A program made the translations under genes and the position numbers. The notes under the pieces are model-generated. The model searched no databases. It saw nothing but the letters and a program-made list of their open reading frames with translations, and had not been told where the DNA came from. Shown one piece after another: positions 39,996-56,589 of a stretch of 64,000 bases of DNA. Numbering within the stretch: position 1 is the first letter of the stretch; every line of letters starts with the position of its first letter. The stretch spans positions 15,066,001-15,130,000 of the forward strand of contig CATNEN010000038.1 of the NCBI GenBank assembly GCA_950097015.1. Direction: 5' to 3'. The stretch comes from Macrostomum hystrix (lineage: Eukaryota > Animalia > Platyhelminthes).

Positions 39996-40012
39996 GAGGC
40001 CGAGGCATTTTG

Positions 40013-43000
40013 ATGGAGGCGGTTTCCGCTGCTCTGGACCGGGTCACCCGACTGCTTGACAATTATCTGCCACTGCCCAATGCTCACGCTAATGACTTTT
40101 TAACCTTAGATATGTGGTCTAGCATGCTGCCCGAGGGTATTGCTAGGTTAGTCTGTTTTTTAATTCACTGTTGCCTTTTTCTAATTGAAGAATAGTTTAG
40201 ATATATTTAAGTGTGTGGCTGGCGTTTCTAAGAAAAATGTGATCATTATATCTAGAGAAAGCAGTTAGTTGCGATTTCTAGGAAAATAGAGTAGTTGCGA
40301 TTTCTAGTAGTTGGGGTTACTAGGAAAAGTGAGAAGTAGGGTTTACTAGGAAAAGTGAGTAGTAGGGATTTCTAGGAGAAGTGAGTAGTAGGGATTTCTA
40401 GGAGAAGTGAGTAGTAGGGATTTCTAGGAAAAGTGAGTAGTTAGGGTTACTAGGAAAAGTGAGTAGTTGGGGTTACTAGGAGAAGTGAGTAGTAGGGATT
40501 TCTAGGAAAAGTGAGTAGTTGGGGTTACTAGGAGAAGTGAGTAGTAGGGATTTCTAGGAGAAGTAAGTGGTTGGCAGTTCAAGAAAATTAGGTGTTGAAA
40601 TAATTTCCTCAAAATCTCAACGCCATCAGTGAGTTGGACGGTCTCTCGCGGGATCGCGAATTAGTCGATCTGTTCCAATCGCATCGGGCCCGCCTTCTAG
40701 CGGACGAATCCCATTGGCTGGCCGCTTGCCAGTCGCTTGACGAGATGCCCCAACCGCAACCGTGAGTTCTGTCTTAGATTTTCGAATTTGCAGATTCGAA
40801 TCCATGACCTTCTTGCTAAAACGTCAAACACCCGTCCGTCATTCCCAGTCCCATTGATCTGTTTCCCGATGGCCGTTTTAACAAGCTGGCCGCTCCGGTG
40901 TGGCGTCACTCCAGCCTGGATAGTCTGGCCCGCGACTGCGCCGCCTGCTGTCTGGACTGCCTCCGAGTGGTTCAACGCGTCGCCGATGATGGCGATGAGG
41001 AAGAAGAGGAATCCGCAGTCTTTGTCAGCCACGGTATGGGCGTTAAAAAGTCGCACGAAGTTGAAAAGATGTCTAGAGTCTGCGATCGTCTGGCTAGAAC
41101 TCGCGGCGTCGACCTCCTAGTTGATGTTGGCTCCGGCAAAGGTTACCTGGGCGCCTGTCTGTACCTGGCTCACGGTCAGCGCGTGCTAGAGATTGACGCC
41201 AAGCCTGGCAACACGGCCAGCGCTATTGAGAGGCGTTCAAATCTTGAAGACAAATGGCGATTCCTGATCCGCCGGGCTGAAGGAGACGCTAAACGATTAA
41301 CTAAGGAAGATTACCAGGCCAATCGTGTTGCTGCCGCTGTTTCAGCGGCCGGTGACTCAGGAAACGCCGAGTCATTCTGCGCCTCAATTAGCGCTGAAGT
41401 ACGCGACGCCAAGCATTTGGCTGAGATTGTGGCCGACAGGTGTGGCCGAGATCGGCAGGTTAGATGAAATCTTTGCCGTGTCTCAACAGGTCAATGTGTC
41501 AATCTAGTAGGCCTGTCATTTGTCAATCTAAAAATCCTGCCAATGTGCCAATCTAATAGGGTCAATGTGTCAATCTAATAGATCTGTCAATGTGTCAATC
41601 TAATAGATCTGTCAATGTGTCAATCTAGTAGGCCTGTCAATGTGTCAATCTAGTAGGCCTGTCAATGTGTCAATCTAGTAGATCTGTCAATGTGTCAATC
41701 TTAAAAGTCCTGTCAATGTGTCAATCTAGTAGATCTGTCAATGTGTCAATCTTACATGTTTGTCAATGTGTCAATCTAGTTGGCCTGTCAATTACTCAAT
41801 CTAAAGACTACATTCAAACAAATGATGTTTAACAAAGATGAAAATCACTCTGGTCACTCCGCAGGACACCTGCTTCGGTCTAATTGGTTTGCACACCTGC
41901 GGCCAGTTAGCCTGCACTCTGCTACAATTCTACGATCTGTCGCCCGACTGCGGCCTGCTAGTGAATGTTGGCTGCTGTTACAATCTGCTTGTAGAGGCCT
42001 ATTGCGTGAGCCAGTGCGAGGAACTGCTCAGGGTCAGTCGCTCTGTCCGTTTGATTTGCGGCTTTGAGCTGGAAAATATTTAGAGTCACGAAGGGAACAA
42101 TTTTATTGGACAGTTAGCTCACTAAATCCTCATCGGCAAACGTTTAAATTTGACAGGAAATCTCTAAAATCCTGATTTAAAATGATTATATTGGACTCGA
42201 TCTGTTCATGTCCCGAATCCTAAAATAATAATAATTTTAATTTTAATTGCAGGAGGGCTGCGGGTAATGGCTCATCATTTGGTGACGCTGGACCCGCAGC
42301 CAGCGAGGAGGCAATTCTGCCCATTTCGCTGACTCCTGAGCACACACGCACACAGATACCGTACGCAGGCATTCGCTCACACAGGTGTGTACATCTGCCC
42401 TGACTTTCTCATCGTCAGGCAGTGTACACTTCACTGTGTCTTGGAGGTTGGCCCTCAAGGGCGTAAATTGCACGACAAGCCTCCAAGCCTTCTCTCCGCG
42501 GCTGCGCCTTAAATGAATGTGGCCTCGCTGCGGAATCGAGCTCAGGGACCTTGGTGCGAGAGGCAAACGCGTTAACCACTCTGCCACCCACCGCTTTTTG
42601 TCCCGAATCCTCATCGAGAAACATTTCTATTTCACCGGTAATCTTTAAAATCCCCATTGGGACAAACTATTATTGTTGGACACTTAATATTTCGAATTGC
42701 CAATATCGAAAATCGGGTGAAATATCCTTGATCCCCATCAAAAGTGAGTAGTGAGTAGTAGGGATTTCTCAAAATCTCAACTTTGATATTTTGGTAGACA
42801 ATTAGATAGATTCGTAGATTGGTAGACAATGAATCTCCCCAATTCCATTAATCGGTCCAACAGCAGCAGGAGCAGCCGCAGTCGCTTCCACCGCCATCGC
42901 CCGGCTTCCCCCTGTCCGCCCGCCTGCGCAGTCGCCGATTCGCCATCGGCCGCAACGCTCGAATTCTGGCCTCGCAGAGTCCGGAACGCCTGGCCGACTC

Positions 43001-43424
43001 AGAGGATCAGCGTCAAATGCACCGGTCGATGTTCTACCGGGTGCTGCTTCAGCAGCTGCTGTTGGACAGGCTGGGCCGCACCGAGGACAGCTGGGTCGTT
43101 GGCAAGATTGGCAAGAAGTGTCCGGACTTTTTAGCCTACGCCCGGCTTGGCATGCGTCGACTTGGATTAGCTGATCTGTCCGAACAGATTAGCGACTCTA
43201 GTATTGCGGATTACGAGGTCCGGTTTGCCTATGTTGAGCGAAGATTATTTCGCTTCTTCCTCTTGAGATGCCTGCTAGCGCCGGCTGTGGAAGCCTGCAT
43301 CCTGCTGGACCGCCTGCTGTGGCTGATGGAACATCGGCGAGACTCGGAGACTCCGCCGAAGCTGTGCAGAATCTTTCAGCCCAAGACTTCGCCTCGCTGC
43401 TACGCTCTAGTGGCCACAAAGTAA
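40013..43424 (+). CDS. METTL25: Methyltransferase-like 25 family protein, about 534 aa; exons 40013-40146, 40630-40761, 40849-41458, 41865-42032, 42864-43424
   Basis: NAHANDF, MGVKKSHEV, SAM motif VDVGSGKGYLG, GLHTCGQL, VGCCYNL, GFPLS, SPRCYALVA; consistent splice phases. Confidence 0.85.
40290..40570. repeat. 24-bp minisatellite in METTL25 intron 1
   Basis: tagg(a/g)aagtgagtagtagggatttc. Confidence 0.85.
41490..41790. repeat. ~25-bp minisatellite in METTL25 intron 3
   Basis: tgtcaatgtgtcaatctagtag... Confidence 0.8.
42245..42592 (-). mobile_element. tRNA-derived SINE (family A), near full length
   Basis: Best-preserved copy; tRNA-like head at the 42592 end. Confidence 0.85.
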
Positions 43425-43494
43425 TCAATCCTGTTGAGGCTGTGGGATTCCGGTTCATCGGGATCGAGATTCAAGGAGTAGTTTTTCGGTCTTT

Positions 43495-44100
43495 AGAAAT
43501 GGGATTTCATTGTATATGAAAGGGATTTCTCTGTAAAGGAGTAGGATATCAATGTATAGGAATGGGATTTTATTGTATATGCAATGGATTTCTCTGTAAA
43601 GGTCTAGGATATCAATGTATAGGAATGGGATTTTATTGTATAGGAATGGGATTTCATTGTATATGAAAGGGATTTCTCTGTAAAGGAGTAGGATATCAAT
43701 GTATAGGAATGGGATTTTATTGTATAGGAATGGGATTTCATTGTATATGAAAGGGATTTCTCTGTAAAGGACTAGGATATCATTATATAGGAATGGGATT
43801 TCATTGTATAAGAATGGGATTTCATTGTATAGGAATGGGATTTCATTGTTATATGAAAGGGATTTCTCTGTAAAGGAGTAGGATATCAATGTATAGGAAT
43901 GGGATTTTATTGTATAGGAATGGGATTTCATTGTATATGAAAGGGATTTCTCTGTAAAGGACTAGGATATCATTATATAGGAATGGGATTTTATTGTATA
44001 GGAATGGGATTTCATTGTATAGGAATGGGATTTCATTGTTATATGAAAGGGATTTCTCTGTAAAGGAGTAGGATATCAATGTATAGGAATGGGATTTCAC
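43495..44100. repeat. Composite 21-bp-based minisatellite
   Basis: ggaatgggattt(t/c)attgtata units with higher-order structure. Confidence 0.85.
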
Positions 44101-44601
44101 TATTACTGTTTTTGGGATCGATTTTGTGGTTCTCAACTTATTGAATAAAACTTAATCCCCTTTAATTAATTTATTGCTTCTAGGCGTACTGTTTTTTAAG
44201 TGATCATCAAGTGGCCATCAAATTGCTAATCACCTGTGTAACGAATAATGTGAAATTATAAAACTGTAAAAGCATGAAAAAATAAAATAATTGTGTTTTT
44301 CTACACAGAAAACATTTTGAAGAATTTTCTTACAAGTTGCTCTTTTGTTCTTTGTGTTATGAAACTGTAGGATTGCTAACATTTAACAGTAGGTAGACAA
44401 CGCCAGTTTTTCCTATGGAATGACAATTTCTAATACTGGCTACTTCACTATAGCTCCCATTGAATATTGGTTGAATATTTTAGAAAACACAGAGAAAATA
44501 AAATTGCGGGTATTTAAAATACTGTCGATACATAAGCATACTTTTTTCTTTACAGCCGCATTGTTTAAGTCTCTAGTTTCTATTCCTAGTTTGCCTCAAC
44601 A

Positions 44602-44886
44602 ATGGACTTTGAAGAAAAGTACATCAACACGCCAGCCACGTCCACTAAAGATGACGAAAGCGTCACATCCAATCATAATTACACTTTGGAGACAGCCGCC
44701 CTCGACGCTGCTGATCCGGCTAACCAGGATTTCATTGGCGCTGGCCTAGATGCCCCTGGCATTCCGGCCATACTGCCTGACAATATCCCTATCCAGGCAA
44801 TGGACATTGCTAATCCGCGGCTCGCTAACTCCCTGCCTAGATCGTTTCCGCACACGCCGCCTGAAATTCCCAGTATGCCAGATTAG
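44602..44886 (+). CDS. Hypothetical 94-aa acidic, Pro-rich protein
   Basis: GC-rich ORF island in AT-rich DNA, good aacaATGG context and an upstream polypyrimidine-AG; no recognised domain. Confidence 0.4.
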   Translation: MDFEEKYINTPATSTKDDESVTSNHNYTLETAALDAADPANQDFIGAGLDAPGIPAILPDNIPIQAMDIANPRLANSLPRSFPHTPPEIPSMPD

Positions 44887-44994
44887 ATGCTTTAGCACTA
44901 GTTTAACTCTAGTTTATGTTTATCCTATTGATGAATGTCTGACTGGATCCTAGATCCTAGAGCTAGAGTGGTCCGTGTAAACACCCCTAAGATA

Positions 44995-45100
44995 GCTTGT
45001 AGTCTTGTGGTTAGAGCGTCAGACTCCCGACTTGAAGGTCGGGGGTTCGATTCCCGACGCCACTGGAACAATTTTTGTCCTTTAGCAAGACACTTAAATT
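44995..45100 (+). mobile_element. tRNA-derived SINE head with a CORE-like tail (family B)
   Basis: tggttagagcg...ggttcgattccc, then tcctttagcaagacacttaa. Confidence 0.65.
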
Positions 45101-45860
45101 CGGCTGCTTCTTCGGCGGGTTTTTTGTGCAAAATAGGAGTGGAATCTACCGAAATCCCCCTATCTTTTTTTAGACAGTATATTATTTTTATTTGTAAACA
45201 CCAAAAAGTACCGCAACTGACTACGATATAACCAAGGTAGTAGTTAATTTATTATATTATAATTTAGCTTTAGCAATTTAGCAAAATCTATGCTGATTTC
45301 TATTTAGTATTCGTTATAAGTTAATTTTAAAATGTACTTTTGACTATCTTATCGTCTTTTTGCTTTCTTTTCTCTGCCCGGTCTTAAATCTCGTTTATGT
45401 GAGCCGCTATCTTTATTTTTGTTTTAATTCCGTTGTCCAGTTCTTTAATTTGTTTCAAATCGGTTTAAGGTAGTTTATTTTTTTACTAAACGACTTTAGT
45501 TATAGTCAAGCAGAAAATGTTTTCTTCGAACAAACAAACAAATCATAAGAAATCATGCATTTCAAATTGTTTCTTTGTCCATTTAGATATAAAATATTTT
45601 CATTGTAAATAAATTCTTTGTTAATTCTTTCGAAACAAAGTAAAATTTTATCATTAAATAATAAAATCATCATTTTATCATCATTTAATAAATAAAATTT
45701 TCAATTGTTTAATTTCTTGCATTATTTTATCCGTAGTATCCGTAGACAGCATTTATCAACATTTTAATCGGTTGATAACTAGATCTCATGCTTACACTCG
45801 TTATGCTACTAGTTAGTAGAGTTGAATGAATTATTTTTTCAATTTCACTTTCAGCCTATA

Positions 45861-48800
45861 ATGACTCAAAAGCAGCAATTAATCATTCGAAACCTTCAAG
45901 AGGTGGTCGGTCTGGACAGGTTGAAAGCTAAAACAGCCAAACACGAGCTTAACGTGTACTGGGGCACAGCTACTACAGGTAGGCCCCATGTGGCTTATTT
46001 TGTTCCCATGAGCAAGCTGGCTGACTACCTATTGGCTGGCTGTCACGTGACTGTACTATTCGCCGATCTGCACGCCTACCTGGACAATATGAAGGCGCCT
46101 TGGTCGCTGCTCAGTAAACGAACAAGCTATTATGAGACTGTGATCAAAGGTATGCTCAAATCGATCGGTGTGCCGCTGGATCGACTCAGGTTTGTGCGCG
46201 GCACAGATTTCGAATTGGGCAAAGACTACACTAGGGATGTGTATAGAATGGCTGCCGAAGTCACAGTTCACGATGCTAAAAAAGCCGGCGCCGAGGTGGT
46301 CAAACAGGTGGCCAGCCCCCTGACATCCGGCCTGCTCTACCCCTGCCTGCAGGCCCTAGACGAGCAGCACCTTGGCGTTGATGCTCAATTTGGTGGCGTA
46401 GATCAGCGAAAAATCTTTATGCTAGCCGAGAAATACCTGGTTAATCTTGGCTACACTAAGCGCATCCACCTGATGAACCCGATGATCCCTGGCCTGACTG
46501 GCGGCAAGATGTCCGCCTCCGAGATTGACTCCAAGATTGATCTGCTAGATCCGGCCGATTCTGTCATCGCCAAGGTGGCCGGCGCGCAATGCTCTCCCGG
46601 CCAGACTGAAGGCAACGGAGTTCTGAGCTTTCTCCAGTATGTTGTCTTTCCGTTGCTAGGCAACGATGGCATTGTCATTGGCGACGCCGATAGACGCTAC
46701 GCCGATTTCAAAGAGGTTGCCGACGACTTTGCGGCCGGAAAATTGACGGCCGATAATTTGAAAACTTGCGTAGCCGATAGTTTAAATCGTCTACTTGGAC
46801 CAGTTAGACGAGAGTTCGACGAGTCAGCTGAACTGCAGAATCTCCTGCTAGATGCTTATCCCGCTGCCAAAGAGTCGCCGACTAATGACTGCGGCGATGC
46901 TGTTGGCGACCTTGTCGAAGGTCAGTTTGCAAACTGATTTCTAATAAAAAAGGCTTTTATCTTCAAGACTTCATTTAAACATCCAGGCTTTCCTCTATCC
47001 GAATATTCAGGGCTATCAACCCAATCTTCAGGGCTCTTATTTAAATATTCAAGTCTTTATTCCAAAAGAATTCAGGCTTCCATCTATATTTTCAGGGCTC
47101 TCATCCAAGAATTCAAGATTGTGCCCAGATATATTCATGTACTTAAAAACATTTCCTCTATATGTGAACACTGCAGGCTTAGCTGGAGTAAAGCTGGCCA
47201 ACATCGACGCGAAGCTGTTGGATTCGCTGAGTCAAATCGCCAGCCTTTTCGATTCCAAAGCTCCCATTGGATCAGTGAAATCAGGATCCCAGCCCAGACT
47301 GCTGTGGACCCTGCGACCCTGCGGTCCTATGCACCTGGGCCACCTGGTGCCGCTGTTTGGCGCACTGTCTATGGCCAAAGCTGGCTGGCAGGTCACTCTG
47401 CTGGTGTCAGAAATGCAGGCTTTCCTAGATAAGAAGCGAGCTCCCATCGAATCCCTGGACACCAGGGGCTCGGTTACTAAGGCCCTGCTTGGTCGCTTAG
47501 CAACCGGTCTCCTTGGCAACGATGCGGCCGTCACCGTCACCTCCGGTTTGGAGGAGTTGAGCTATGACAAAGACTACGTGCTTGACATGTACCGCTTGGT
47601 GTCATTGGTTACTGTTGACGAGGTGCGATTATTGGATTGAAAAAGATAAACAGATAGTATTTATAGCTGTAAAATTGGTTCTATCATTAGCTGGAGTGGA
47701 AATTTGGGTTGGTCCGGTGGCCTCTCCAGTCCGCGGACTGAACAGTTGTACACAGTTGTTTAGAGCGCCGCGCAATAGCTGCGTGGCTATGTCTATGGCT
47801 GTACCTGTGTCCCAACTGGGCTAGGTGTTATTTCTTTTCTATCCCTGGTATATTTTCCCTGATCCCAGAGAAAGGCTATAAGGGGTAGAGAAAAAGGAGT
47901 CCAGGGGGAGAGAAACAGGGGTAGAATTGGGGGAGAGAAGAGAAGTATAAAAGGAGGGAAAGAGGAGGTTTCAAAGGGTTGAGAAAAACGGGTAGAAGGA
48001 GAAGAGGAAGATGGGTAGAGTGGGGAATAAAGAGTGGTAGAAGGGCAAAGAAACAAGTATAAAGGGGAGAACGAAGAGGGAAGAGAAACAGGGGTAGAAT
48101 GATGAGGGAAGCAGGGGTAGAATGGTGAGAGAAACAGGGGTAGAATGATGAGGGAAGCAGGGGTAGAATGGTGAGAGAAACAGGGGTAGAATGGTGAGAG
48201 AAACAGGGGTAGAATGGTGAGAGAAACAGGGGTAGAATGGTGAGAGAAACAGGGGTAGAATGATGAGGGAAGCAGGGGTAGAATGGTGAGAGAAACAGGG
48301 GTAGAATGATGAGGGAAGCAGGGGTAGAATGGTGAGAGAAACAGGGGTAGAATGGTGAGAGAAACAGGGGTAGAATGGTGAGAGAAACAGGGGTAGAATG
48401 GTGAGAGAAACAGGGGTAGAATGGTGAGAGAAACTGGGGTAGAAGGAGGAGAGATAGTGGTAGAGCAGAACCAACAGACACCCCATGCAACGGTTCGCCC
48501 GCAGGCAATGCAAGCAGGCTCAGGTGTGCTGTCGCACGGCGAGCATCCGCCCCTGTCCCACCTGATCTGGCCGTGTCTATCAGCTCTGGACGCGCACCAC
48601 TGCGGAGCCTCAATCCGATTGGCTGGCCGAGGCGAGGCTAGCCTGTCCGAATTCGTCTCTGTCGCATTGCAACGTCTCGGCTATCCGGCAACGCCCAGCT
48701 ATGGCCACTCTGAGCTGCCCGGCCTCTCGGGTCTAGCCGGCATGAGCCTGTCCGATCCGGACAATGCCATCCTGGCTCTGGAGCCGCCGGCTAGTCTGCG

Positions 48801-50686
48801 AAAGAAGGTCAAGAAGATGTTCTGCGAGCCGGGCAATCTAGACAGGTGCCCGGCTCTGGACTGCGTTCGATTGCTTCTGCTGCCGTTTAGGCGTCTATTG
48901 GGAAGCGACAGTCTTGGCATCACTGTGCCCAGATCGGCTGAGATCGGCGGTGATTTGAAGTTTGAAAGCTTCGAAGCGCTGAAGACTGCGTTCGCTGATA
49001 AGGTGAGACTGGGTGATGAACAATAAAAGAGAAGTGGGTGAGAAAGATAGGTAGAAAAGGGGATACAGGGTACAATAATAATAATTGCAGGAGGGCTGTG
49101 GGCAGTGGCACATCATTTGGTGACACTTGACCCGCAGCCAGCGAGGAGGCAATTCTGCCCGTTCCCCTGACTCCTGAGAACACACGCACACAAATACTGT
49201 ACACAGGCACATGGTCACACAGGTGTGCACTCTCACTGTGCCTTGGAGGTTGGCCCTTTGAGGGCGTAAATTGCACGACAAGTCCCAAAGCCTTCTCTCC
49301 GCGGCTGCGCCCCGAATGAACGTGGCCTCGCCGCGGAATCGAGCTCATCGAATCGAAAAATGTGTTAGAAGACAGAGAGAGTGAGGTATAGAAAGGAGAG
49401 AGAGTTGGGTAAAAATTGGGACAGAAGCTAAGAGGTGTGAAAGCCCCTTGTGAAATTAAAGTCCAGTATCTGGCCCACTGAATCCACACGAAGCCCTCTC
49501 ACTTGTTACTCGTGACCGCCTGCCCCATTCGCCAGTCGCTACACCCGGGCGATCTGAAAGGCTACGTTGAAGCCGGCCTATTGGAGATGCAGAACCGGCT
49601 GCGCGAGATGGCGTTCGGCGATAGCGCCGAGCTGAGCAAGCAGCTGGACGCGGCTTTCAGTGCTCAGGACAAAAGTGAGTAATCTTATATGGCTTTGACT
49701 GAGTAAAGATTTGCCAGATTGCGGTTTCAGAATTATCGTAAGTTTAGGTGTCAGAAATCTTTTCAGTTGGGTTGTCAGAAATCTTTTCAGTTGGGTTGTC
49801 AGAAATCTTGTCAGTTAAGGTGTCAGAAATCTTGTCAGTTAAGGTGTCAGAAATCTTGTCAGTTGGATATCAGAAATCTTGTCAGTTGAGGTGTCAGAAA
49901 TCTTGTCAGTTGGGGTGTCAGAAATCTTGTCAGTTGGGGTGTCAGAAATCTTGTCAGTTGGGTGTCAGAAATCTTGTCAGTTGAGGTGTCAGAAATCTTG
50001 TCAGTTAAGGTGTCAGAAATCTTGTCAGTTAAGGTGTCAGAAATCTTGTCAGTTGGATATCAGAAATCTTGTCAGTTGAGGTGTCAGAAATCTTGTCAGT
50101 TGGGGTGTCAGAAATCTTGTCAGTTGGGTGTCAGCTACGCACAAACCCACCAACAGAATCGGCCGGGGCCGCAGCCGACGAGTTGAATCCCCACCGTCTG
50201 GACATTCGGGTCGGCCGCATCCTGGAGGTCGCCGTCCACCCGGACGCCGATCAGCTTTACGTTGAATCCGTAGACTTCAGCGACGGCGCCTCGCCGCCTC
50301 GCACTGTTGTCTCCGGCCTGGTGAAGTACCTGCCCGCTGACAGGCTGCGCGGCGGCCTATTTCTGTTCCTGTGCAACCTGAAGCCGGCCAAGATGCGCGG
50401 CATCGAGTCAAGCGCCATGCTGCTGTGCGCCAGCACGGCTGACACCGTCGAGCCGCTGACGCCGCCGGACGGATCGAAGCCCGGCGATCGGCTCGGATTC
50501 GAAGGCGTCGCCGAAATCGCCGCCGGACCAGACGCCGAATTGAATCCCAAGAAGAAGGTCTGGGAGAAAATCGCCGAACACCTGCGGGTCAACGAGGACG
50601 GCATTGCTGTTTGGCGCCAATTTGAAATGCGCTCCGACAAGGGCATTGTCACGGCTCCCAGCCTCTGCTCTGCGCCAATCAAATGA
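45861..50686 (+). CDS. YARS1: Cytoplasmic tyrosyl-tRNA synthetase, double-length (about 890 aa) with a C-terminal EMAP II/tRNA-binding domain; exons 45861-46920, 47177-47622, 48505-49002, 49536-49674, 50157-50686
   Basis: [38 protein letters not shown]; a second TyrRS-like module; LDIRVG...[12 protein letters not shown]; all junctions are GT-AG and in phase. Confidence 0.93.
48075..48440. repeat. ~24-bp purine-rich minisatellite in YARS intron 2
   Basis: gagaaacaggggtagaatggtga units. Confidence 0.9.
49082..49347 (-). mobile_element. 5'-truncated SINE (family A)
   Basis: Homologous to 42245-42545. Confidence 0.8.
49748..50133. repeat. 23-24-bp minisatellite in YARS intron 4
   Basis: tgtcagaaatcttgtcagtt.. 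units. Confidence 0.9.
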
Positions 50687-50924
50687 TGAAGCCCAGTTGC
50701 TGGGCATTCATATGCGAGATTTTTCTTTTTTGACCTGTGTTCCAAACTAATTTTCCCGTTTTTGCCCTACCTTTTTTGCGCCACTTTTTCTGTCGGTATT
50801 ATTCTCCTTAATTTAATATGATCTTTAGTTTTTCTTCTAATAACGGTTATGTCTCTTAAACTTTCCTTGCCCCTTACTTTCCCTGCCTTTCGTTTATGTG
50901 GGCTTAGTATATATTCCCTTACAA

Positions 50925-51280
50925 CCTGACAACATCCACTCTTCCGTTACTTTTCTATCGGACAACATCCACTCTTCCGTTACTTTTCTATCGGACAACA
51001 TCCTCTCTTCCGTTACTTTTCTATCTGACAGCAGCCTTACTTCCGTTACTTTTTCACCTGAAACCAGCCTTTCTTTCGTTACTTTTCCACCTGGGACAAG
51101 CCTCTCTTTCGTTACTTTTCTACCTGACACCACCAGCCTCACTTCCGGTAGTTTTCCACCTGATATCAACCTCACTTCCGTTACTTTTACATCTGACAGC
51201 TGCCTCTTCCTTTACTTTTCCACCAGACACCAGCCTCTCTTCCGTTACTTTTCCACATGACACCAGCGTCTCTTCCGTTA
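50925..51280. repeat. Degenerate 33-bp tandem repeat
   Basis: cttccgttacttttc.. units. Confidence 0.7.
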
Positions 51281-51799
51281 ATTTTAATATGCATTCTTGG
51301 TATTTTACGCTACATTAATTGACTATTCGGTTGCTTTGGTCCAGCTTAGAGCTCTGTTTATCCAAGTCTATTCTTGGCCTAGATTATTCTAACAGTTTTG
51401 AAGTGACATCTTTCGCGCCGTGTTTGTTGCTATGTGACAGATTTAGTTGGTTTCTCACACTATTCTGGTGTCTTGTATTCTTGCGCCCTACAAACTGCTT
51501 GTATTTTAAGTTTTGCTAGTTCGAAGAATACTTTATTTTCTAATTAATGACCTAATGCGATTAGTAATTAGTTGTGTTTGTTAAATTTATTCCGCTGTCT
51601 TCAAAAATTGTGTGCGTCTAACTGTCTTCTGAATTCATAATATTACTGATAATTTCGATTATAAAATTAAACAATTGACCGTGTTACTATGCCGTTGGTA
51701 TGCTCGTTAGTTGATTTATTTGTGTCAGCAAGCACCTGTGTTTTCTGCGCGTTTCGTTAAAAAAAACAGTAAATGAAAGCATAATCTACAAAATGTGGA

Positions 51800-52380
51800 A
51801 TGTTTTTTAGTATAAAATTTTGAGTCAAAATTCATTATAAAGACACATCGGCTGTGGCGGGCCTCCTTAAACCTAGCGGTTGTTGCTTCTTGAGCTGCTG
51901 CTTCTTGCTTGCCTTTGGCAAACATTTTCATAATCAGCAGAAGGACAAGAATAGATCCAGGCAGTGCGAGATGTAATCATTGTCGCCTAAGCGAGCCAGT
52001 TCCACAATCTTCTGCGTCTCGTAGACTAAGAAAGCACAGAAGACCAACAGCGTCAGCTTCAGTGTTCGATTGAAGATGAATGGTGAACGGGCGAAGATGT
52101 TGACAAGTTTCAGTAGGAGCAGGACGGTTAGGCCAGACGACAGTGGACCAGCCAGGAACATCATCCAGCGGCTGGTTCTAGCCAGTAGAGCGGCGCCGCA
52201 GAATGTGACGGTCACCATCATGGCGAGCCAGAGCTTTTCGGCTTGCATCAGCAGTCCTAAATCGTTACGAGTGCTGTGGATGTGCGCACAAGTAGACTAA
52301 GACTGAATAACAGTCGAGCAGAGATGGCAAGCAACCGGCCAGACACAGACCTGGGCGCCACGTGCAAGTAGCTCAACATT
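51800..52380 (-). pseudogene. Degenerate Bax inhibitor-1 (TMBIM6-like) copy
   Basis: LLVFCAFLVYETQKIVELARLGDNDYISHCLDLFLSF matches the BI-1 C-terminal signature; a frameshift or stop follows and no intact N-terminus is visible. Confidence 0.6.
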
Positions 52381-52609
52381 TTTGAGTCTTAGTAAGCTAT
52401 AGGTAAACAGTATTCTTTTGTTGGTAAATTCCTAGAACTCCTTTTCGAATGGTATAACCCGCTGTATGATGCATCAGTTTTTTGTTGCTGCAGACTCTAG
52501 CGTGCTCGCTATGCTCAGGCGCCTGAGCTCAGTCTGAAATTCAAAAGACGAAGCACAGGAATTTGACTTGGCTAAAACAAAAACCAAGCTTTAATAATAA
52601 GAACAAATT

Positions 52610-52875
52610 AATAATTGTAGGACAGCTGCTTGCAATGGCACATCATTTGGTGACAATTGACCCGCAGCCAGCGAGCAGGCAATTCTGCCCATTCCCCTGA
52701 CTCCTGAGCACTCACTCACTCAGGTGTGTACTCGCACATCTGCCCTGACTTTCTCATCGTCAGGTTGTAGGTTGTAGACCTTGTAGGTTGGCCCTCAGGG
52801 GCGTGAATTGCACGTCAAGGCCCCACGGCTCCACAAGCTACCAAATGAATGTGGCTTCGCCGAGGAATCGAGCTT
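52610..52875 (-). mobile_element. Degenerate SINE (family A)
   Basis: Homologous to the other family A copies. Confidence 0.7.
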
Positions 52876-53331
52876 AGATTCGGAATGCACTTAATGAGTC
52901 TGGGTCTCAACATGTCTGGTGAGACTCATGATGTTGCAGAGCTGCTACATGCGCTGTAACACACTAAAAGTGGGGAACGAACCTCGCGATGGCAGACCGA
53001 GACCTGTTTCTGGCTTGTTTGCCTTCGTCAGTCAGCCATAGCCACACGCTGTCCTCTCCCACCACTCTTAGTGTGCACAGAAGTCTCTTTTAATCTTGCC
53101 ATTTTATGGCGATACTTTTTAGTGTTACGAGCGTATGTGAGAGTTTTGCAGCCAAGCCTTTGCTTTTCTACTGTTGTCAGTAGTCTGAATTGTATCTCTC
53201 ACAGTCTTCAAACCGAGCTTGAAATTTGTCCTTTTTACCAGGTGCTTTAGCAGCACAAACACCTGGCCTTGAACGTCTGTCAGGCTCGATCCTCATCAGT
53301 TCTCTCTCGCTTGGTGCGAGAGACAAACGCA

Positions 53332-55398
53332 TTAACCGCTCTGCCACTCACCCCCCTTAAAAAACGAAGCGTTTAAACATACATCATCCGAGACTAGTCG
53401 TTCGAGTTTCTGCCAAACTTCGTCTGTGTTGCAGATCCGCTGCCTATGCCGTTGAATCAGGCTCACCAGCAGATCTTTGTCCCGACAGAATTCCAGAACC
53501 ATCAGCAGCTCCTGCATGTCCGGCTCTTCATCTTGCAGCACATCCTCGAACCATGCCCGATGGTGGGTCTCGTCCGCGACTCCCAAATGCAGACAGAGGC
53601 AGCGGAGAAGCGCCCGCATGTTCATGAACCGAATCTCTGCGAACTGCATCCGACCCGGGAAACAGTTCCTGATGGATTCTGGGAGAATTTCTAGGCTTGG
53701 CACTCGCTCTTCAAATCGAAGACTGAACTTCCAAATAGAGTCGGTGCTGTTCAGATGCCGCCAGACATAATCTTTGGCTTCTTTACCAGACGTCATCCGC
53801 CCGGGACACGGCACCCCTTTGCTGACCTGGAATGTCATTCCATCTCTCAAAATGACGATGGCTTCATCTTTCATGCCGTAGTTCAGATACGTCAGACCCA
53901 TCAGACAGTGTCTAGCTGTGGCTGCAAAGTCTCCAATTCTCCTAATGCTGTTCAACAGACTCTCGCAAGATCCCGGGTTCGCATCTGTCAGCCCTAGCAA
54001 CGCACTCCTCACAGCATCTGACACCGAGTGGTAGGGCAACTCGCCGGACTCTGGCACCGGCTTCACCTGCGTGTACGGAAGTATCAGGAAGGGGTGAAAG
54101 CGAAAGACTTCGCCGTTACTGAGTGGTCTCAACTGCTGTTTAAATTCGAGTATCAGAATTGGAAGCTGTTCCATCATCTTCTTCACAGCCTTCACTACAT
54201 CCGCTTTTTTACTGACGTTTTTTTTCAGATACACGATTGCGTCACGCAGGAAAAAGTGCCTCATGCACTCATGAGAATCCGGGCGAGAATTCTGAAGGCC
54301 ATTCAGCAGAATTTGAAGTGCCCGCCTGGTGAGACTCATGATGCTGCAGGGCTGCCACATGCACGATGGTGTCTCGTCCAGCAGGTAAAAAATCATGGTC
54401 TTGGCGTGGTAGGTCTTTAAACCGAGATTAAAATTTGTCCTTTTTACCAGGTACTTCAGTAGAACAAACACCTGGCCTTGAACGTCTGTCAGGCTCCTCA
54501 TCAGTTCTCTCTCTAGGAAGCTGGTGCTGACCCTCAGTTTCTGGCCCCCTTCTCCAGGTGGAGCCGCAGACACCAGATGACAGGGCGACTTGGTTAGCTC
54601 CCCCCGCAGTGAGCTCAAAACTTCAGGTAAGATTTCAGTCTTGCATCCCTCTATTAGCACATCGATTCGAGGGTAGGCGCAGCAGCGGTAGGCAAAGATG
54701 ACGTCCACAGCTGGTTTCAAAGGCGATCCCTGGCACGCTTTTGCCGGCGTCGATGCTAAAAATGTTTGAGTGAGTCAAGTCATCTTCAGCATTTTTCACC
54801 GCTTGCTCACTGTACGTACATTGTTTATAATAAATGGTCTTACCTGATCCCGGGTACAATACATGCCCATCTTCATAATGCACTCTTTCCTCAGCTGACA
54901 CATATTCGCAGCGGCAAATTTGCTGATCATGGCCTTGCATGTGAAATTCTTGATCCGAGAGTATCACAGTCTCATCAATATCTGCATCGCTGTCGGTGAC
55001 TCCGTTGAGGCTGGCAAGGCTGTTGCCCCAGCCGTCCGAGTAGCTGCCGACAATGTTAACCAGGTTCTCATTCCACCTCCGACGCATAATGTCCTGCAGG
55101 ACGTCTGCCAATGCGCTCTGAATAGCCGCCCTGTGCTGCTGGAATCCAGCCTGTCGCATTTCATCGTGCAGCGAGGTGCTCTGCAGGATCTCAGGACTTT
55201 CTATCTCTCCGGGATTTTCCAATCTGCAAACGAAATGCTTTCGTTACTACCTTTCTTGTCTTCAATAGGATCATGTACAGGTGGTTTTACGAAATCAAAT
55301 CTTACTCAATCTTCTTATCAATCTTCCTCAAGGCCTGAAGTGTCTTCTCTGTGCATTCTGGAAGCTGCAGTTGGTCTAGGGTGCGAAGAAATTGCAGA
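53332..55398 (-). CDS. Mab-21/cGAS-like nucleotidyltransferase; exons about 55398-55306, 55223-54844, 54755-53332
   Basis: VGSYSDG...DSDADIDE NTase motif and a third acidic residue in AVDVI; RVSTSFLERELM, KTYHAKTMIFY and HFFL are Mab-21 C-terminal motifs; splice phases are consistent. The 5' end is uncertain. Confidence 0.8.
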
Positions 55399-55784
55399 CT
55401 AAATCATTTTAGCTTCTAGTATCGACGCGATTTGCTTCCGTATAACCAAAGAATGCACTAAGATCGAAGGATAGCAGACGCAGTTAATCAACGCTTTGAA
55501 AAAATATCGAACGTAGAGAGGAATGAAGGCGGCGTGCAGATTGTCTGGCGAAATAGAGAATTATCGATCGTCGAGTCGAGGAGGGAAGGCTGCGCGTGGA
55601 TTGGCTGGTGGAATCGAGAATATCGATCGTAGAGTGATTAACTTTTTAGCGGGAGATAAATAATGCAGATAAAAATGAAAGTTTTAATCTGACTACGAAA
55701 TCTGACTCTGATTAAAACTGTAGAAATAGGAGAAAAAGAATAAAACATTGACAGTATCACCTATCATCACCTCGATGGTCTCAC

Positions 55785-56589
55785 CTGACAGAGAGAGACC
55801 ATTGATCGGCGTCTGGCGCAGCATCATCATGAGGATGCTAATGTGGCCAAAGCAGCAGGCAGCTGCTGCTGCGCTCAGTCCGGCTGCATTCATCAATCCT
55901 TGATCGCAGCCAAGCTGAAGCAGACGCAGCACCGTATCTTCGTGGCCTACAATGGCAGCCAAGTGCAGCGGAGTAGACCCATTACTATCCGGAGAGTTAG
56001 GGTCGGCCCCTCCGCTGACCAGAAAGGACATTGCCTCCGATCGGCCTCGAACAGCGGCAAGATGGACTGGACTTTCGCCAGTGCATGTTTGCTGATTTGG
56101 GTCCGCAGAAGCAGCCAGAAGAAGTCGCAAGACGTCTATGTGCCCATTTATTGCTGCATGATGCGTGGCGGACCAGCCGTTCTCGTCCTTGGAGTTGGGA
56201 TCCGCTCGGGCACCTAGCAGGTAGTGCGCGCATTCAAGATGGCCTCGGGCCGATGCAATGTGAAGTGGCGACCTGCCGACTGCTGTCCGCAGACTCACAT
56301 CCGCCTGGCTTTTTGTTAGCAGCCGCACCGATTCTTCGTGATTGCGCCAGCATGCCTCGTGAAGGGCCGTCCTCCCGCGAACGTCCTGAACGTCCAACCG
56401 CGCCGGCGCCTCAATCAGCAGCCCAAGGATGGTCGAGTGACCAAGTCGCGCTGCCAAGTACAGGGCTGTCCTGCCATCCTCGTCCTGGCCGTCCAAGCTG
56501 ATGCTGCAGTCGTGTAGCAGTCGTTTCACGTCATAGAGTTTACCGTACGTCGCCGCCCTATTGAGCTCCGAAACTCGATGCTGATCCAT
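55785..56589 (-). CDS. Ankyrin-repeat region (about 7 repeats), probable first exon of the Mab-21 gene
   Basis: GRTAL(Y/H), GRSPLH, GESPVH and GSTPLH repeats; donor tcag|gtgag at 55785/55784. Confidence 0.85.

What the first reader, a model, noticed from the sequence alone, without database searches (positions are those of the whole stretch)
45861..50686. Double-length TyrRS with reciprocally degenerated halves: a single-chain asymmetric pseudo-dimer in an animal-type (EMAP II-bearing) enzyme
Seen: the spliced ORF (about 890 aa) holds two tandem TyrRS modules plus an EMAP II domain. Module 1 keeps the catalytic motifs ([32 protein letters not shown]) but has lost the anticodon-domain signatures (AFCEPG becomes AQCSPG; HPGDLK becomes TADNLK). 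Module 2 has degenerate catalytic motifs ([26 protein letters not shown]) but keeps KKMFCEPGN and LHPGDLK (exon 49536-49674). Known: TyrRS is a homodimer that binds tRNA across subunits, and trypanosomatid double-length TyrRS shows this same N-catalytic/C-anticodon division of labour. Inference: an independent metazoan origin of an intramolecular heterodimer with fixed half-of-sites activity.
Basis: partly seen in the sequence, partly recalled or inferred. Interest (0 to 1): 0.85.

Follow-up and report, generated by a model that had tools for sequence, protein, structure and literature searches.

The report
Flatworm double-length tyrosyl-tRNA synthetase pseudo-dimer
This flatworm's only cytosolic tyrosyl-tRNA synthetase is one 890-residue chain of two copies of the enzyme, one keeping the catalytic site and the other the anticodon-reading site; the design is solved in Leishmania and turns out to be widespread but apparently undescribed in animals.

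Summary
Transcript contigs from three runs of one study match the window without a mismatch. They join five exons (45855-46920, 47177-47622, 48505-49002, 49536-49674, 50157-50957) into one mRNA whose CDS runs 45861-50686 and encodes 890 aa.

- **Module 1** is about 60-65% identical to human TyrRS and keeps every catalytic motif. It has lost the anticodon-domain signatures (CEPGN, xFGG with a 4-residue deletion, HPGDLK).
- **Module 2** has lost the tyrosine-binding, GGxDQ and KMSKS signatures but keeps FCEPGN, EIGGD and HPGDLK. An EMAP II domain follows it.
- It is the only cytosolic-type TyrRS locus in the 220 Mb genome.
- The genome is a Macrostomum flatworm. The M. lignano orthologue (892 aa) is conserved in every domain (71-96% identity, against about 50% in the linkers), so module 2 is not decaying.
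- An AlphaFold model of that orthologue superposes on whole Leishmania double-length TyrRS chains (TM 0.79-0.82).

The same architecture occurs in tapeworm, fluke and monogenean proteins, in nematodes and in malacostracan crustaceans, and in other eukaryotes, with the same reciprocal degeneration almost everywhere. It is independent of the trypanosomatid, plant and SAR (stramenopile/dinoflagellate) enzymes. How many times it arose within animals is unresolved. I found no paper describing it in animals.

The parts
45853..45854 (+). AG acceptor after a pyrimidine tract (tttcag|cctataATG); probable spliced-leader trans-splice site
   Evidence: The transcript contigs carry 23 letters that do not lie on the genome before 45854. 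The sequence is read. The genome holds exact copies of the Macrostomum lignano SL RNA 5' end (SL from PMC8629364).
45855..46920 (+). Exon 1: 6-nt 5' UTR, ATG at 45861, whole TyrRS module 1 (catalytic domain intact, anticodon-binding domain degenerate), ends in phase 1
   Evidence: The motifs [27 protein letters not shown] and KMSAS are present. CEPGN reads CSPGQ, there is a 4-residue deletion at the EKWGG site, and HPGDLK reads TADNLK.
47177..47622 (+). Exon 2: inter-module linker, N-terminal helix and first part of the module 2 pseudo-catalytic domain ([15 protein letters not shown])
48505..49002 (+). Exon 3: rest of the module 2 pseudo-catalytic domain ([18 protein letters not shown]) and first part of its anticodon-binding domain ([16 protein letters not shown])
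49536..49674 (+). Exon 4: module 2 anticodon-binding helix with SLHPGDLK, then linker; ends in phase 1
   Evidence: 67% identical to M. lignano residues 674-716.
50157..50957 (+). Exon 5: EMAP II-like tRNA-binding domain, stop TGA at 50684-50686, 3' UTR at least to 50957
   Evidence: PF01588 E 1.7e-25; contig end at 50957; sequence.

Best explanation
This is the single gene for the cytosolic tyrosyl-tRNA synthetase of a Macrostomum flatworm. It is probably SL trans-spliced. It encodes one 890-residue chain: TyrRS module 1, a roughly 40-50-residue linker, TyrRS module 2, and an EMAP II-like domain. The two modules most likely fold against each other as an intramolecular copy of the normal TyrRS homodimer. 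Module 1 supplies the only working active site (tyrosine activation and transfer). Module 2 supplies the only working anticodon (G34) recognition site and, through its well-conserved but inactive Rossmann domain, the dimer-interface scaffold. One tRNA-Tyr would bind across the two modules, helped by the single C-terminal EMAP II domain. Shown: the gene structure, the transcript, the motif pattern, the conservation, and that it is the sole locus. Inferred or predicted: the intramolecular pairing and the one-site/one-tRNA mechanism. The gene arose by tandem duplication of the mini-TyrRS unit of an opisthokont-type, EMAP II-bearing enzyme. This happened no later than the common ancestor of Macrostomum and the parasitic flatworms, and reciprocal subfunctionalisation followed.
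For: - **One mRNA.** Identical 2974-nt spliced contigs in three runs span all five exons.
- **Sole locus.** Module 1 used as a query finds only this locus in the 220 Mb genome. PF00579 finds only three other loci, none matched by module 1.
- **Motif pattern.** Module 1 keeps Y39, HVAY, YPxLQALD, GGVDQ and KMSAS. It has lost CEPGN, the xFGG aromatic (a 4-residue deletion) and the Asp of HPGDLK. Module 2 is the mirror image.
- **Parallel with Leishmania.** In the Leishmania major structure the C half lacks KMSKS and the N half has a 6-residue deletion in its anticodon-binding domain (PMC8319005, citing Larson 2011).
- **Purifying selection in every domain.** Identity to M. lignano is 96% (module 1 catalytic), 71% (module 1 anticodon domain), 82% (module 2 catalytic), 74% (module 2 anticodon domain) and 86% (EMAP II), against about 50% in the linkers. 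H676, P677, D679, L680, K681, G655 and G656 of module 2 are invariant across 15 flatworm, nematode and crustacean proteins.
- **Predicted arrangement.** The AlphaFold2 model of the M. lignano orthologue has pTM 0.69 and module pLDDT of 80-93. It aligns to whole Leishmania double-length chains over about 740 columns at TM 0.79-0.82 by target length. Single-module TyrRS structures cover only about 340 columns.
- **Shared origin in flatworms.** Flatworm catalytic halves (85/91) and flatworm anticodon halves (84/87) each group together in domain-restricted trees.
Against: - There is no biochemical datum for any animal double-length TyrRS.
- The fold was predicted for the M. lignano orthologue, not for the window's joined protein. 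AlphaFold was trained after the Leishmania structures were released, and the alignment was shallow (15 rows).
- Module 2 keeps an H-L-G-H signature and the Asp of QALD, and its 'dead' catalytic domain (82%) is better conserved than its anticodon domain (74%). It may therefore do more than act as a scaffold.
- The transcript evidence comes from assembled contigs of one study. Contigs cannot show minor isoforms. Skipping exons 2-4 would keep the reading frame.
Confidence: 0.75

Rival explanations
1. The chain does not pair with itself. Two chains associate through N:N and C:C (or head-to-tail) TyrRS-type interfaces, giving a dimer with two active sites and two anticodon sites that work in trans between chains.
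For: TyrRS modules dimerise by nature. The inter-module linker (about residues 342-392 in the orthologue) is predicted to be disordered. No experiment fixes the oligomeric state.
Against: The single-chain model places the halves as in the Leishmania intramolecular pseudo-dimer, with TM about 0.8 over about 740 columns. Pairing N:N would put a dead anticodon domain opposite each active site, so tRNA could not be read across that dimer. That is the reverse of what the reciprocal motif pattern suggests.
Confidence: 0.1
2. Module 2 is more than a scaffold plus anticodon reader. Its pseudo-active site still binds a nucleotide or another ligand and regulates module 1 or has a non-translational role. 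This is not exclusive of the main explanation.
For: H(L/I)GH is retained in module 2 of Macrostomum, Taenia, Heterobilharzia, Cichlidogyrus and two unnamed lineages, and as HLGF or HLGY in nematodes. The module 2 catalytic domain is 82% identical between the two Macrostomum species, higher than its anticodon domain.
Against: The tyrosine-binding positions (Y39 to L, Q170 to S), GGxDQ (AGRGE) and KMSKS (GMSLS) are all altered, and they differ again between flatworm classes. Interface and acceptor-stem contacts alone could explain the conservation.
Confidence: 0.12
3. The working enzyme is a canonical-length isoform made by splicing exon 1 directly to exon 5 (both phase 1, so the frame is kept). 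The double-length mRNA would then be a minor or regulatory form.
For: The phases of exon 1 (ends in phase 1) and exon 5 (starts in phase 1) are compatible, as read.
Against: No such joint appears in any of the runs laid, and the only assembled transcript is the five-exon form. That isoform would lack every anticodon-recognition signature. Module 2 is conserved across flatworm classes.
Confidence: 0.02
4. Module 2 is a decaying relic of a recent tandem duplication that is carried along in the transcript.
For: Its catalytic motifs are degenerate and Pfam scores are weak.
Against: The frame is open in every flatworm examined. It is 74-82% identical to M. lignano against about 50% in the linkers. 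Its anticodon motifs are invariant across phyla. It is the only copy of those motifs in the genome's cytosolic TyrRS.
Confidence: 0.01

Closest known systems
Double-length TyrRS of trypanosomatids (Leishmania major 3P0H/3P0I/3P0J, L. donovani 5USF; T. brucei enzyme shown to need both units)
   Same: Two TyrRS modules in one chain, and the only cytosolic TyrRS gene. The N half is catalytic with a deletion in its anticodon domain. The C half has lost the catalytic signature but reads the anticodon. The predicted arrangement superposes at TM about 0.8.
   Different: About 19% sequence identity. It is not the closest sequence relative of either module, so the two designs are convergent rather than orthologous. 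The flatworm enzyme carries a C-terminal EMAP II domain and keeps an HLGH signature in the dead half. The Leishmania C half is reported to have lost its class I signatures, with KMSKS replaced by ARAVL (PMC8319005).
Arabidopsis/Brassica 'tyrosine--tRNA ligase 2' (At1g28350-type tandem TyrRS)
   Same: Tandem TyrRS modules in one polypeptide (PMC9437257, PMC7564348; Brassica P0023).
   Different: In the plant protein both halves still carry catalytic motifs, and the halves are each other's nearest relatives. It belongs to the other eukaryotic TyrRS subclade (YDGFEPSGRMHIAQG type) and has no EMAP II domain.
Canonical metazoan cytosolic TyrRS (human YARS1: mini-TyrRS plus EMAP II-like domain, homodimer)
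   Same: Module 1 is about 60-65% identical to human mini-TyrRS (E 4e-131; Foldseek TM 0.94). The EMAP II domain sits in the same C-terminal position.
   Different: There is one chain with two unequal modules instead of two equal subunits, and one EMAP II domain per pseudo-dimer instead of two. The ELR cytokine motif is not kept (SKR in module 1, alignment).
Database orthologues and look-alikes: M. lignano PAA91082.1/A0A1I8ILR9, Taenia crassiceps KAL5106853.1, Heterobilharzia CAH8606090.1, nematode (Heligmosomoides, Aphelenchoides, Mesorhabditis) and malacostracan (Scylla, Penaeus, Homarus, Hyalella, Idotea) 'tyrosine--tRNA ligase' entries
   Same: The same two-module layout and the same reciprocal motif loss. 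The flatworm and crustacean proteins also end in EMAP II.
   Different: They are annotated only as tyrosine--tRNA ligase or hypothetical protein. The nematode proteins lack EMAP II, and the crustacean ones have an extra N-terminal extension of about 90 residues. Whether they share one origin with the flatworm gene is unresolved.

Membership tests
Class Ic tyrosyl-tRNA synthetase, archaeal/eukaryotic cytosolic type (Pfam PF00579) | Rossmann-fold catalytic domain with HIGH-type and KMSKS-type signatures and tyrosine-binding residues | tested here: met
   Module 1 matches PF00579 at E 7e-53 over profile 3-291. [17 protein letters not shown] and GGVDQ align residue for residue with human TyrRS.
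Class Ic tyrosyl-tRNA synthetase, archaeal/eukaryotic cytosolic type (Pfam PF00579) | C-terminal helical anticodon-binding domain with the G34-reading signatures (CEPGN, xFGG, HPxDLK) | tested here: met
   Met in module 2 only ([23 protein letters not shown]). Module 1 has all three altered.
Double-length pseudo-dimeric TyrRS (architecture defined on Leishmania major) | Two complete TyrRS modules in one polypeptide, translated from one mRNA | tested here: met
   A spliced 2974-nt contig in three runs; domain mapping.
Double-length pseudo-dimeric TyrRS (architecture defined on Leishmania major) | It is the organism's only cytosolic TyrRS | tested here: met
   No second cytosolic-type locus in the 220 Mb, 42-contig assembly.
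Double-length pseudo-dimeric TyrRS (architecture defined on Leishmania major) | One half keeps the active site and has a damaged anticodon domain; the other half is the reverse | tested here: met
   Motif table, compared with the description of the L. major enzyme in PMC8319005.
Double-length pseudo-dimeric TyrRS (architecture defined on Leishmania major) | The two halves of one chain pack as the canonical TyrRS dimer | tested here: inconclusive
   Prediction only, and on the M. lignano orthologue: pTM 0.69 and TM 0.79-0.82 to whole Leishmania chains. No experiment.
Double-length pseudo-dimeric TyrRS (architecture defined on Leishmania major) | Common descent with the trypanosomatid gene (membership as a homologous family) | tested here: not met
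   Both modules fall in the opisthokont TyrRS clade, separated at 100* from the plant/SAR/ichthyosporean double-length proteins. Leishmania chains score far below human, yeast and archaeal TyrRS for exon 1 and do not appear for exons 2 and 3. No trypanosomatid row was in the tree itself.
Double-length pseudo-dimeric TyrRS (architecture defined on Leishmania major) | Both units are required for aminoacylation (shown for T. brucei, Kaser 2018 as cited in PMC8319005) | not testable with these tools
   Needs enzyme assays.
Metazoan-type TyrRS with appended EMAP II-like domain | C-terminal OB-fold tRNA-binding domain (PF01588) after the synthetase core | tested here: met
   PF01588 at E 1.7e-25 over the full profile 1-96 in exon 5; 84-86% identical to M. 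lignano.

The most novel reading that the evidence does not exclude
Single-chain, reciprocally degenerated TyrRS is a recurrent evolutionary end-point rather than a trypanosomatid oddity. Tandem duplication of this half-of-the-sites homodimer would have been fixed and subfunctionalised independently in several animal lineages (flatworms, nematodes, malacostracan crustaceans and unnamed others) and in other eukaryotes. Public data still hold every stage: three intact modules in a snail; a 905-aa protein in which only the N-half anticodon domain has decayed; fully reciprocal forms; and forms with the two roles in reversed order. Because neither half can revert to a self-sufficient enzyme, each origin would be a one-way ratchet.
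Probability: 0.5. Interest if true: 0.65.

Novelty: new variant of a known kind. Interest (0 to 1): 0.5.

Why it matters
TyrRS is the textbook half-of-the-sites enzyme. [quoted passage not shown] So far this has been exploited only in Leishmania.

An animal-type, EMAP II-bearing version exists in free-living and parasitic flatworms. It also exists, possibly by convergence, in nematodes and in decapod, amphipod and isopod crustaceans. This matters in three ways:
- It offers replicated natural experiments on subfunctionalisation of a homodimer.
- It matters for annotation, because these genes are labelled as ordinary tyrosine--tRNA ligases or get split.
- In tapeworms, flukes and parasitic nematodes, an essential enzyme is structurally unlike the host's homodimer, which is the same argument that made the Leishmania enzyme a drug-target candidate.

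For this window alone the result is a well-supported gene annotation rather than a new mechanism.

Tried and rejected
- **Two genes or a pseudogene remnant:** rejected by the spliced contigs.
- **Retrocopy as the source of the spliced form:** rejected, because the genome holds a single locus.
- **A tRNA gene next to the locus**, suspected from a tRNA-like ORF translation near 45000: ARAGORN finds none in 40000-56000.
- **Exon 4 alone against PDB sequences:** no hit because it is too short. Its identity rests on the alignment with full-length relatives.
- **ESM Atlas on the crustacean C half:** it returned only generic TyrRS clusters and no taxonomy.
- **A single origin of all animal double-length enzymes:** the full-length tree gives mirror clades at 98/98*. 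That support vanishes for the catalytic halves once the convergently relaxed anticodon domain is removed. AU tests there reject neither a single clade (p 0.38) nor a taxon-congruent placement (p 0.34). In the anticodon-domain tree the signal is weak and the branches are long (85/73; p 0.077 and 0.0195). I treat the number of origins as open.
- **Literature:** six full-text searches and eight papers read turned up only the trypanosomatid and Arabidopsis cases. Larson et al. 2011 itself is not held, so I could not check whether it lists animal examples.
I therefore obtained no nucleotide sequences or sample names for the unnamed proteins or for M. lignano, and could not run dN/dS.
- **Complex prediction** was not used. 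A pass against unrelated-protein controls would not distinguish intra-chain from inter-chain pairing.
- Each exon was searched by reference, and the M. lignano protein P0001 stood in for the full length in the alignment, the fold and the trees.
Full report
**What is there**

ORF listing and sequence reading give five coding pieces on the + strand. Their GT..AG borders have compatible phases:
- exon 1: 45855-46920 (ATG at 45861, ends in phase 1)
- exon 2: 47177-47622
- exon 3: 48505-49002
- exon 4: 49536-49674 (ends in phase 1)
- exon 5: 50157 onward, with TGA at 50684-50686

The CDS is 2673 nt, or 890 codons.

Pfam finds a full tRNA-synt_1b domain in exon 1 (E 7e-53). It finds partial matches in exon 2 (profile 4-92) and exon 3 (profile 130-230), and a full tRNA_bind/EMAP II domain in exon 5 (E 1.7e-25). 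Against PDB sequences, exon 1 matches human cytosolic TyrRS at E 4e-131. Exons 2 and 3 match human and yeast TyrRS over residues about 35-142 and 147-315.

**Is it one gene?**

That is about the exonic share. I laid three of them on 45500-51100. Each has a single 2974-nt contig with no mismatch that covers 45854-46918/20, 47175/7-47620/2, 48503/5-49000/2, 49534/6-49674 and 50157-50957. All four skipped parts are GT..AG. No other joint between exons was seen.

The spliced form cannot come from a retrocopy. The whole 220 Mb assembly has only this locus for cytosolic-type TyrRS. A PF00579 scan finds just three further loci, which module 1 does not match; these are presumably TrpRS and organellar enzymes, which I did not check further.

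These are assembled contigs from one study, so minor isoforms are not excluded. Exon 1 to exon 5 splicing would keep the frame, but it was not observed.

**Whose genome?**

The best hit of exon 3 among 1.8 billion representatives is an 892-aa protein from Macrostomum lignano. Its identity to the window's exons 1 to 5 is 85%, 77%, 75%, 67% and 84%.

The contigs carry 23 unaligned letters upstream of an AG acceptor at 45853-54. The published 35-nt M. lignano spliced leader plus its GTAAG donor (PMC8629364) occurs 18 times exactly in this genome, and a 3-mismatch variant occurs in a long array. The window therefore comes from a Macrostomum species other than M. lignano, and the mRNA is probably SL trans-spliced. 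I did not see the leader letters themselves.

**Reciprocal degeneration**

I aligned halves of 21 double-length proteins and canonical enzymes, adding the window's exons 2-4 as separate fragment rows.

Module 1 reads [38 protein letters not shown] and GGKMSASE, which is the canonical animal pattern. Its anticodon domain, however, reads [12 protein letters not shown] for FCEPGNVxxNG. It lacks four residues at the ExFGG site, and it has TADNLK for HPGDLK.

Module 2 reads [35 protein letters not shown] and GLAGMSLS. The tyrosine-binding, GGxDQ and KMSKS positions are changed. It keeps [16 protein letters not shown] and SLHPGDLK. By my recollection of the M. jannaschii TyrRS-tRNA complex, the aromatic of xFGG (F261) and the Asp of HPxDLK (D286) contact G34. 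I did not test that assignment here.

The description of the L. major enzyme in PMC8319005 is strikingly parallel: the C half lacks KMSKS, and the N half has a six-residue deletion in its anticodon domain.

**Module 2 is not decaying**

Identity between the window and M. lignano, by domain:

| Region | Identical / aligned | Identity |
|---|---|---|
| Module 1 catalytic domain | 217/227 | 96% |
| Module 1 anticodon domain | 80/113 | 71% |
| Module 2 catalytic domain | 164/199 | 82% |
| Module 2 anticodon domain | 78/106 | 74% |
| EMAP II | 149/173 | 86% |
| Linkers | | about 50% |

In a 15-row alignment of flatworm, nematode and crustacean proteins, the module 2 residues G655, G656, H676, P677, D679, L680 and K681 are invariant. 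The least constrained folded domain is the module 1 anticodon domain, as the division-of-labour model predicts.

One result was not predicted. The inactive catalytic domain of module 2 is better conserved than its anticodon domain, and it keeps an H(L/I)GH signature in most lineages. A dimer-interface and scaffold role would explain this. A residual ligand-binding role is not excluded.

**Predicted architecture**

I folded the M. lignano orthologue with a 15-row alignment instead. The model has mean pLDDT 74.6 and pTM 0.69. Both modules score 80-93, while the linker (342-392) and much of the EMAP II domain are low.

Foldseek against the PDB aligns single-module TyrRS structures over about 340 columns (human, TM 0.94 by target). 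It aligns the Leishmania double-length chains (5USF, 3P0J, 3P0H, 3P0I) over about 740 columns, with TM 0.79-0.82 by target and 0.60-0.63 by query. Both halves therefore superpose at once, so the predicted arrangement is the pseudo-dimer. This is a prediction, and AlphaFold has seen those structures.

**How common is it?**

The same searches show the architecture is widespread.
- **Flatworms:** Taenia crassiceps (984 aa), Heterobilharzia americana (834 aa), Cichlidogyrus casuarinus.
- **Nematodes:** Heligmosomoides, Aphelenchoides, Mesorhabditis (682-712 aa, no EMAP II).
- **Malacostracan crustaceans:** Scylla, Penaeus, Procambarus, Cherax, Homarus, Palaemon, Halocaridina, Idotea, Hyalella (about 960-985 aa, with EMAP II).
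- **Others:** a pseudoscorpion model; several unnamed lineages; Sphaeroforma, Brassica, diatoms and dinoflagellates.

In every one except Brassica, the half with the active site has lost the anticodon motifs, and vice versa.

Other stages exist too:
- a snail protein with three intact modules
- an unnamed 905-aa protein whose two halves both keep the catalytic motifs, while only the C half keeps CEPGN and HPGDLK
- several proteins with the roles in reversed order (P0008, P0353, P0354, P0357, P0361)

**Origins**

A tree of halves separates the plant/SAR/ichthyosporean type from the opisthokont type at 100*. Both Macrostomum halves are in the latter. Together with the weak or absent Leishmania matches, this supports an origin independent of trypanosomatids and plants.

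Within animals, a careful full-length tree puts all catalytic halves in one clade and all anticodon halves in another (98/98* each). On its face that means one old duplication. That reading would require canonical and double-length genes to have coexisted through many deep nodes. The signal also looks partly artefactual.
- With only the catalytic domain, the catalytic-half clade collapses to a polytomy of per-phylum groups (flatworms 85/91). AU tests there reject neither alternative (p 0.38 and 0.34).
- With only the anticodon domain, flatworm C halves group (84/87), and they join nematodes and crustaceans only weakly (85/73). All C halves as one clade gives p 0.077, and crustacean C halves placed with canonical pancrustaceans gives p 0.0195. 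Long branches are involved.

I conclude that the duplication predates the split of Macrostomum from the parasitic flatworms, and that the number of origins among animal phyla is open.

**Literature**

Full-text searches and reading found the pseudo-dimer described only for trypanosomatids and noted for Arabidopsis. I found nothing on flatworms, nematodes or crustaceans. Larson et al. 2011 is not held, and subscription papers are largely missing. 'Undescribed in animals' therefore means not found, not proven absent.

**Verdict**

[quoted passage not shown] The claim of novelty must be narrowed. The kind is known, orthologues are already in public databases under plain names, and the phenomenon is broad in animals. 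What seems new is recognising an opisthokont-type, EMAP II-bearing version and its apparent recurrence.

Noticed in passing
window 45853-45860, and G000 C1, C15, C17, C42, C39 (L004, L005): The mRNA probably receives the Macrostomum spliced leader. There are 23 unaligned letters at the contig's 5' end and an AG acceptor 7 nt before the ATG. The genome has 18 exact copies of the published M. lignano SL plus GTAAG in arrays spaced about 11.6 kb apart. A 3-mismatch SL variant forms an array of at least 65 copies with about 927-bp spacing on C39. If the SL ends in ...GCATG as published, its ATG would be in frame with the gene's own start (ATG CCT ATA ATG) and could add three residues.
   Followed up: partly
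window 49053-49426 (intron 3): Contig depth here is 1000-2600, against about 22 on the exons, with many diverged short contigs and loose ends. This is a highly repeated and/or highly transcribed element sitting inside the intron.
   Followed up: no
window 48082-48444 (intron 2), 49711-50134 (intron 4), 50924-51285 (3' UTR end and downstream): Minisatellite arrays: 23-bp unit x 15.8 copies, 24-bp unit x 17.8 copies (with 71- and 95-bp higher-order periods), and 33-bp unit x 10.9 copies. They generate the long repetitive spurious ORFs seen on both strands. The 24-bp array ends only about 20 nt before the exon 5 acceptor.
   Followed up: partly
proteins P0008, P0353, P0354, P0357, P0361 (unnamed Logan/ENA assemblies): Double-length TyrRS with the roles in reversed order: the N half carries CEPGN and HPGDLK but degenerate catalytic motifs, and the C half carries YWG, QALD, GGxDQ and KMS.
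   Followed up: partly
proteins P0352 (905 aa, unnamed) and P0350 (Gigantopelta aegis, 1151 aa): Apparent early stages. In P0352 both halves have intact catalytic motifs but only the C half keeps CEPGN and HPGDLK. P0350 has three modules with intact catalytic motifs; this may be a real triple enzyme or tandem genes merged by annotation.
   Followed up: partly
window 45861-46920 versus 47177-49674: Module 1 is encoded by one intron-free 1060-nt exon. Module 2 is split by two internal introns, and introns also bound it on both sides. The module boundary coincides with intron 1. Comparing intron positions with canonical animal TyrRS genes could show which module is the older copy.
   Followed up: no
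run X1 (organism A) on window 48646-48828, 49473-49666, 50534-50765: Short contigs with 0-1 mismatches from a second study. One of them runs across the intron 3/exon 4 border, so it is DNA or unspliced RNA of the same or a very close strain. It is not evidence of expression.
   Followed up: no
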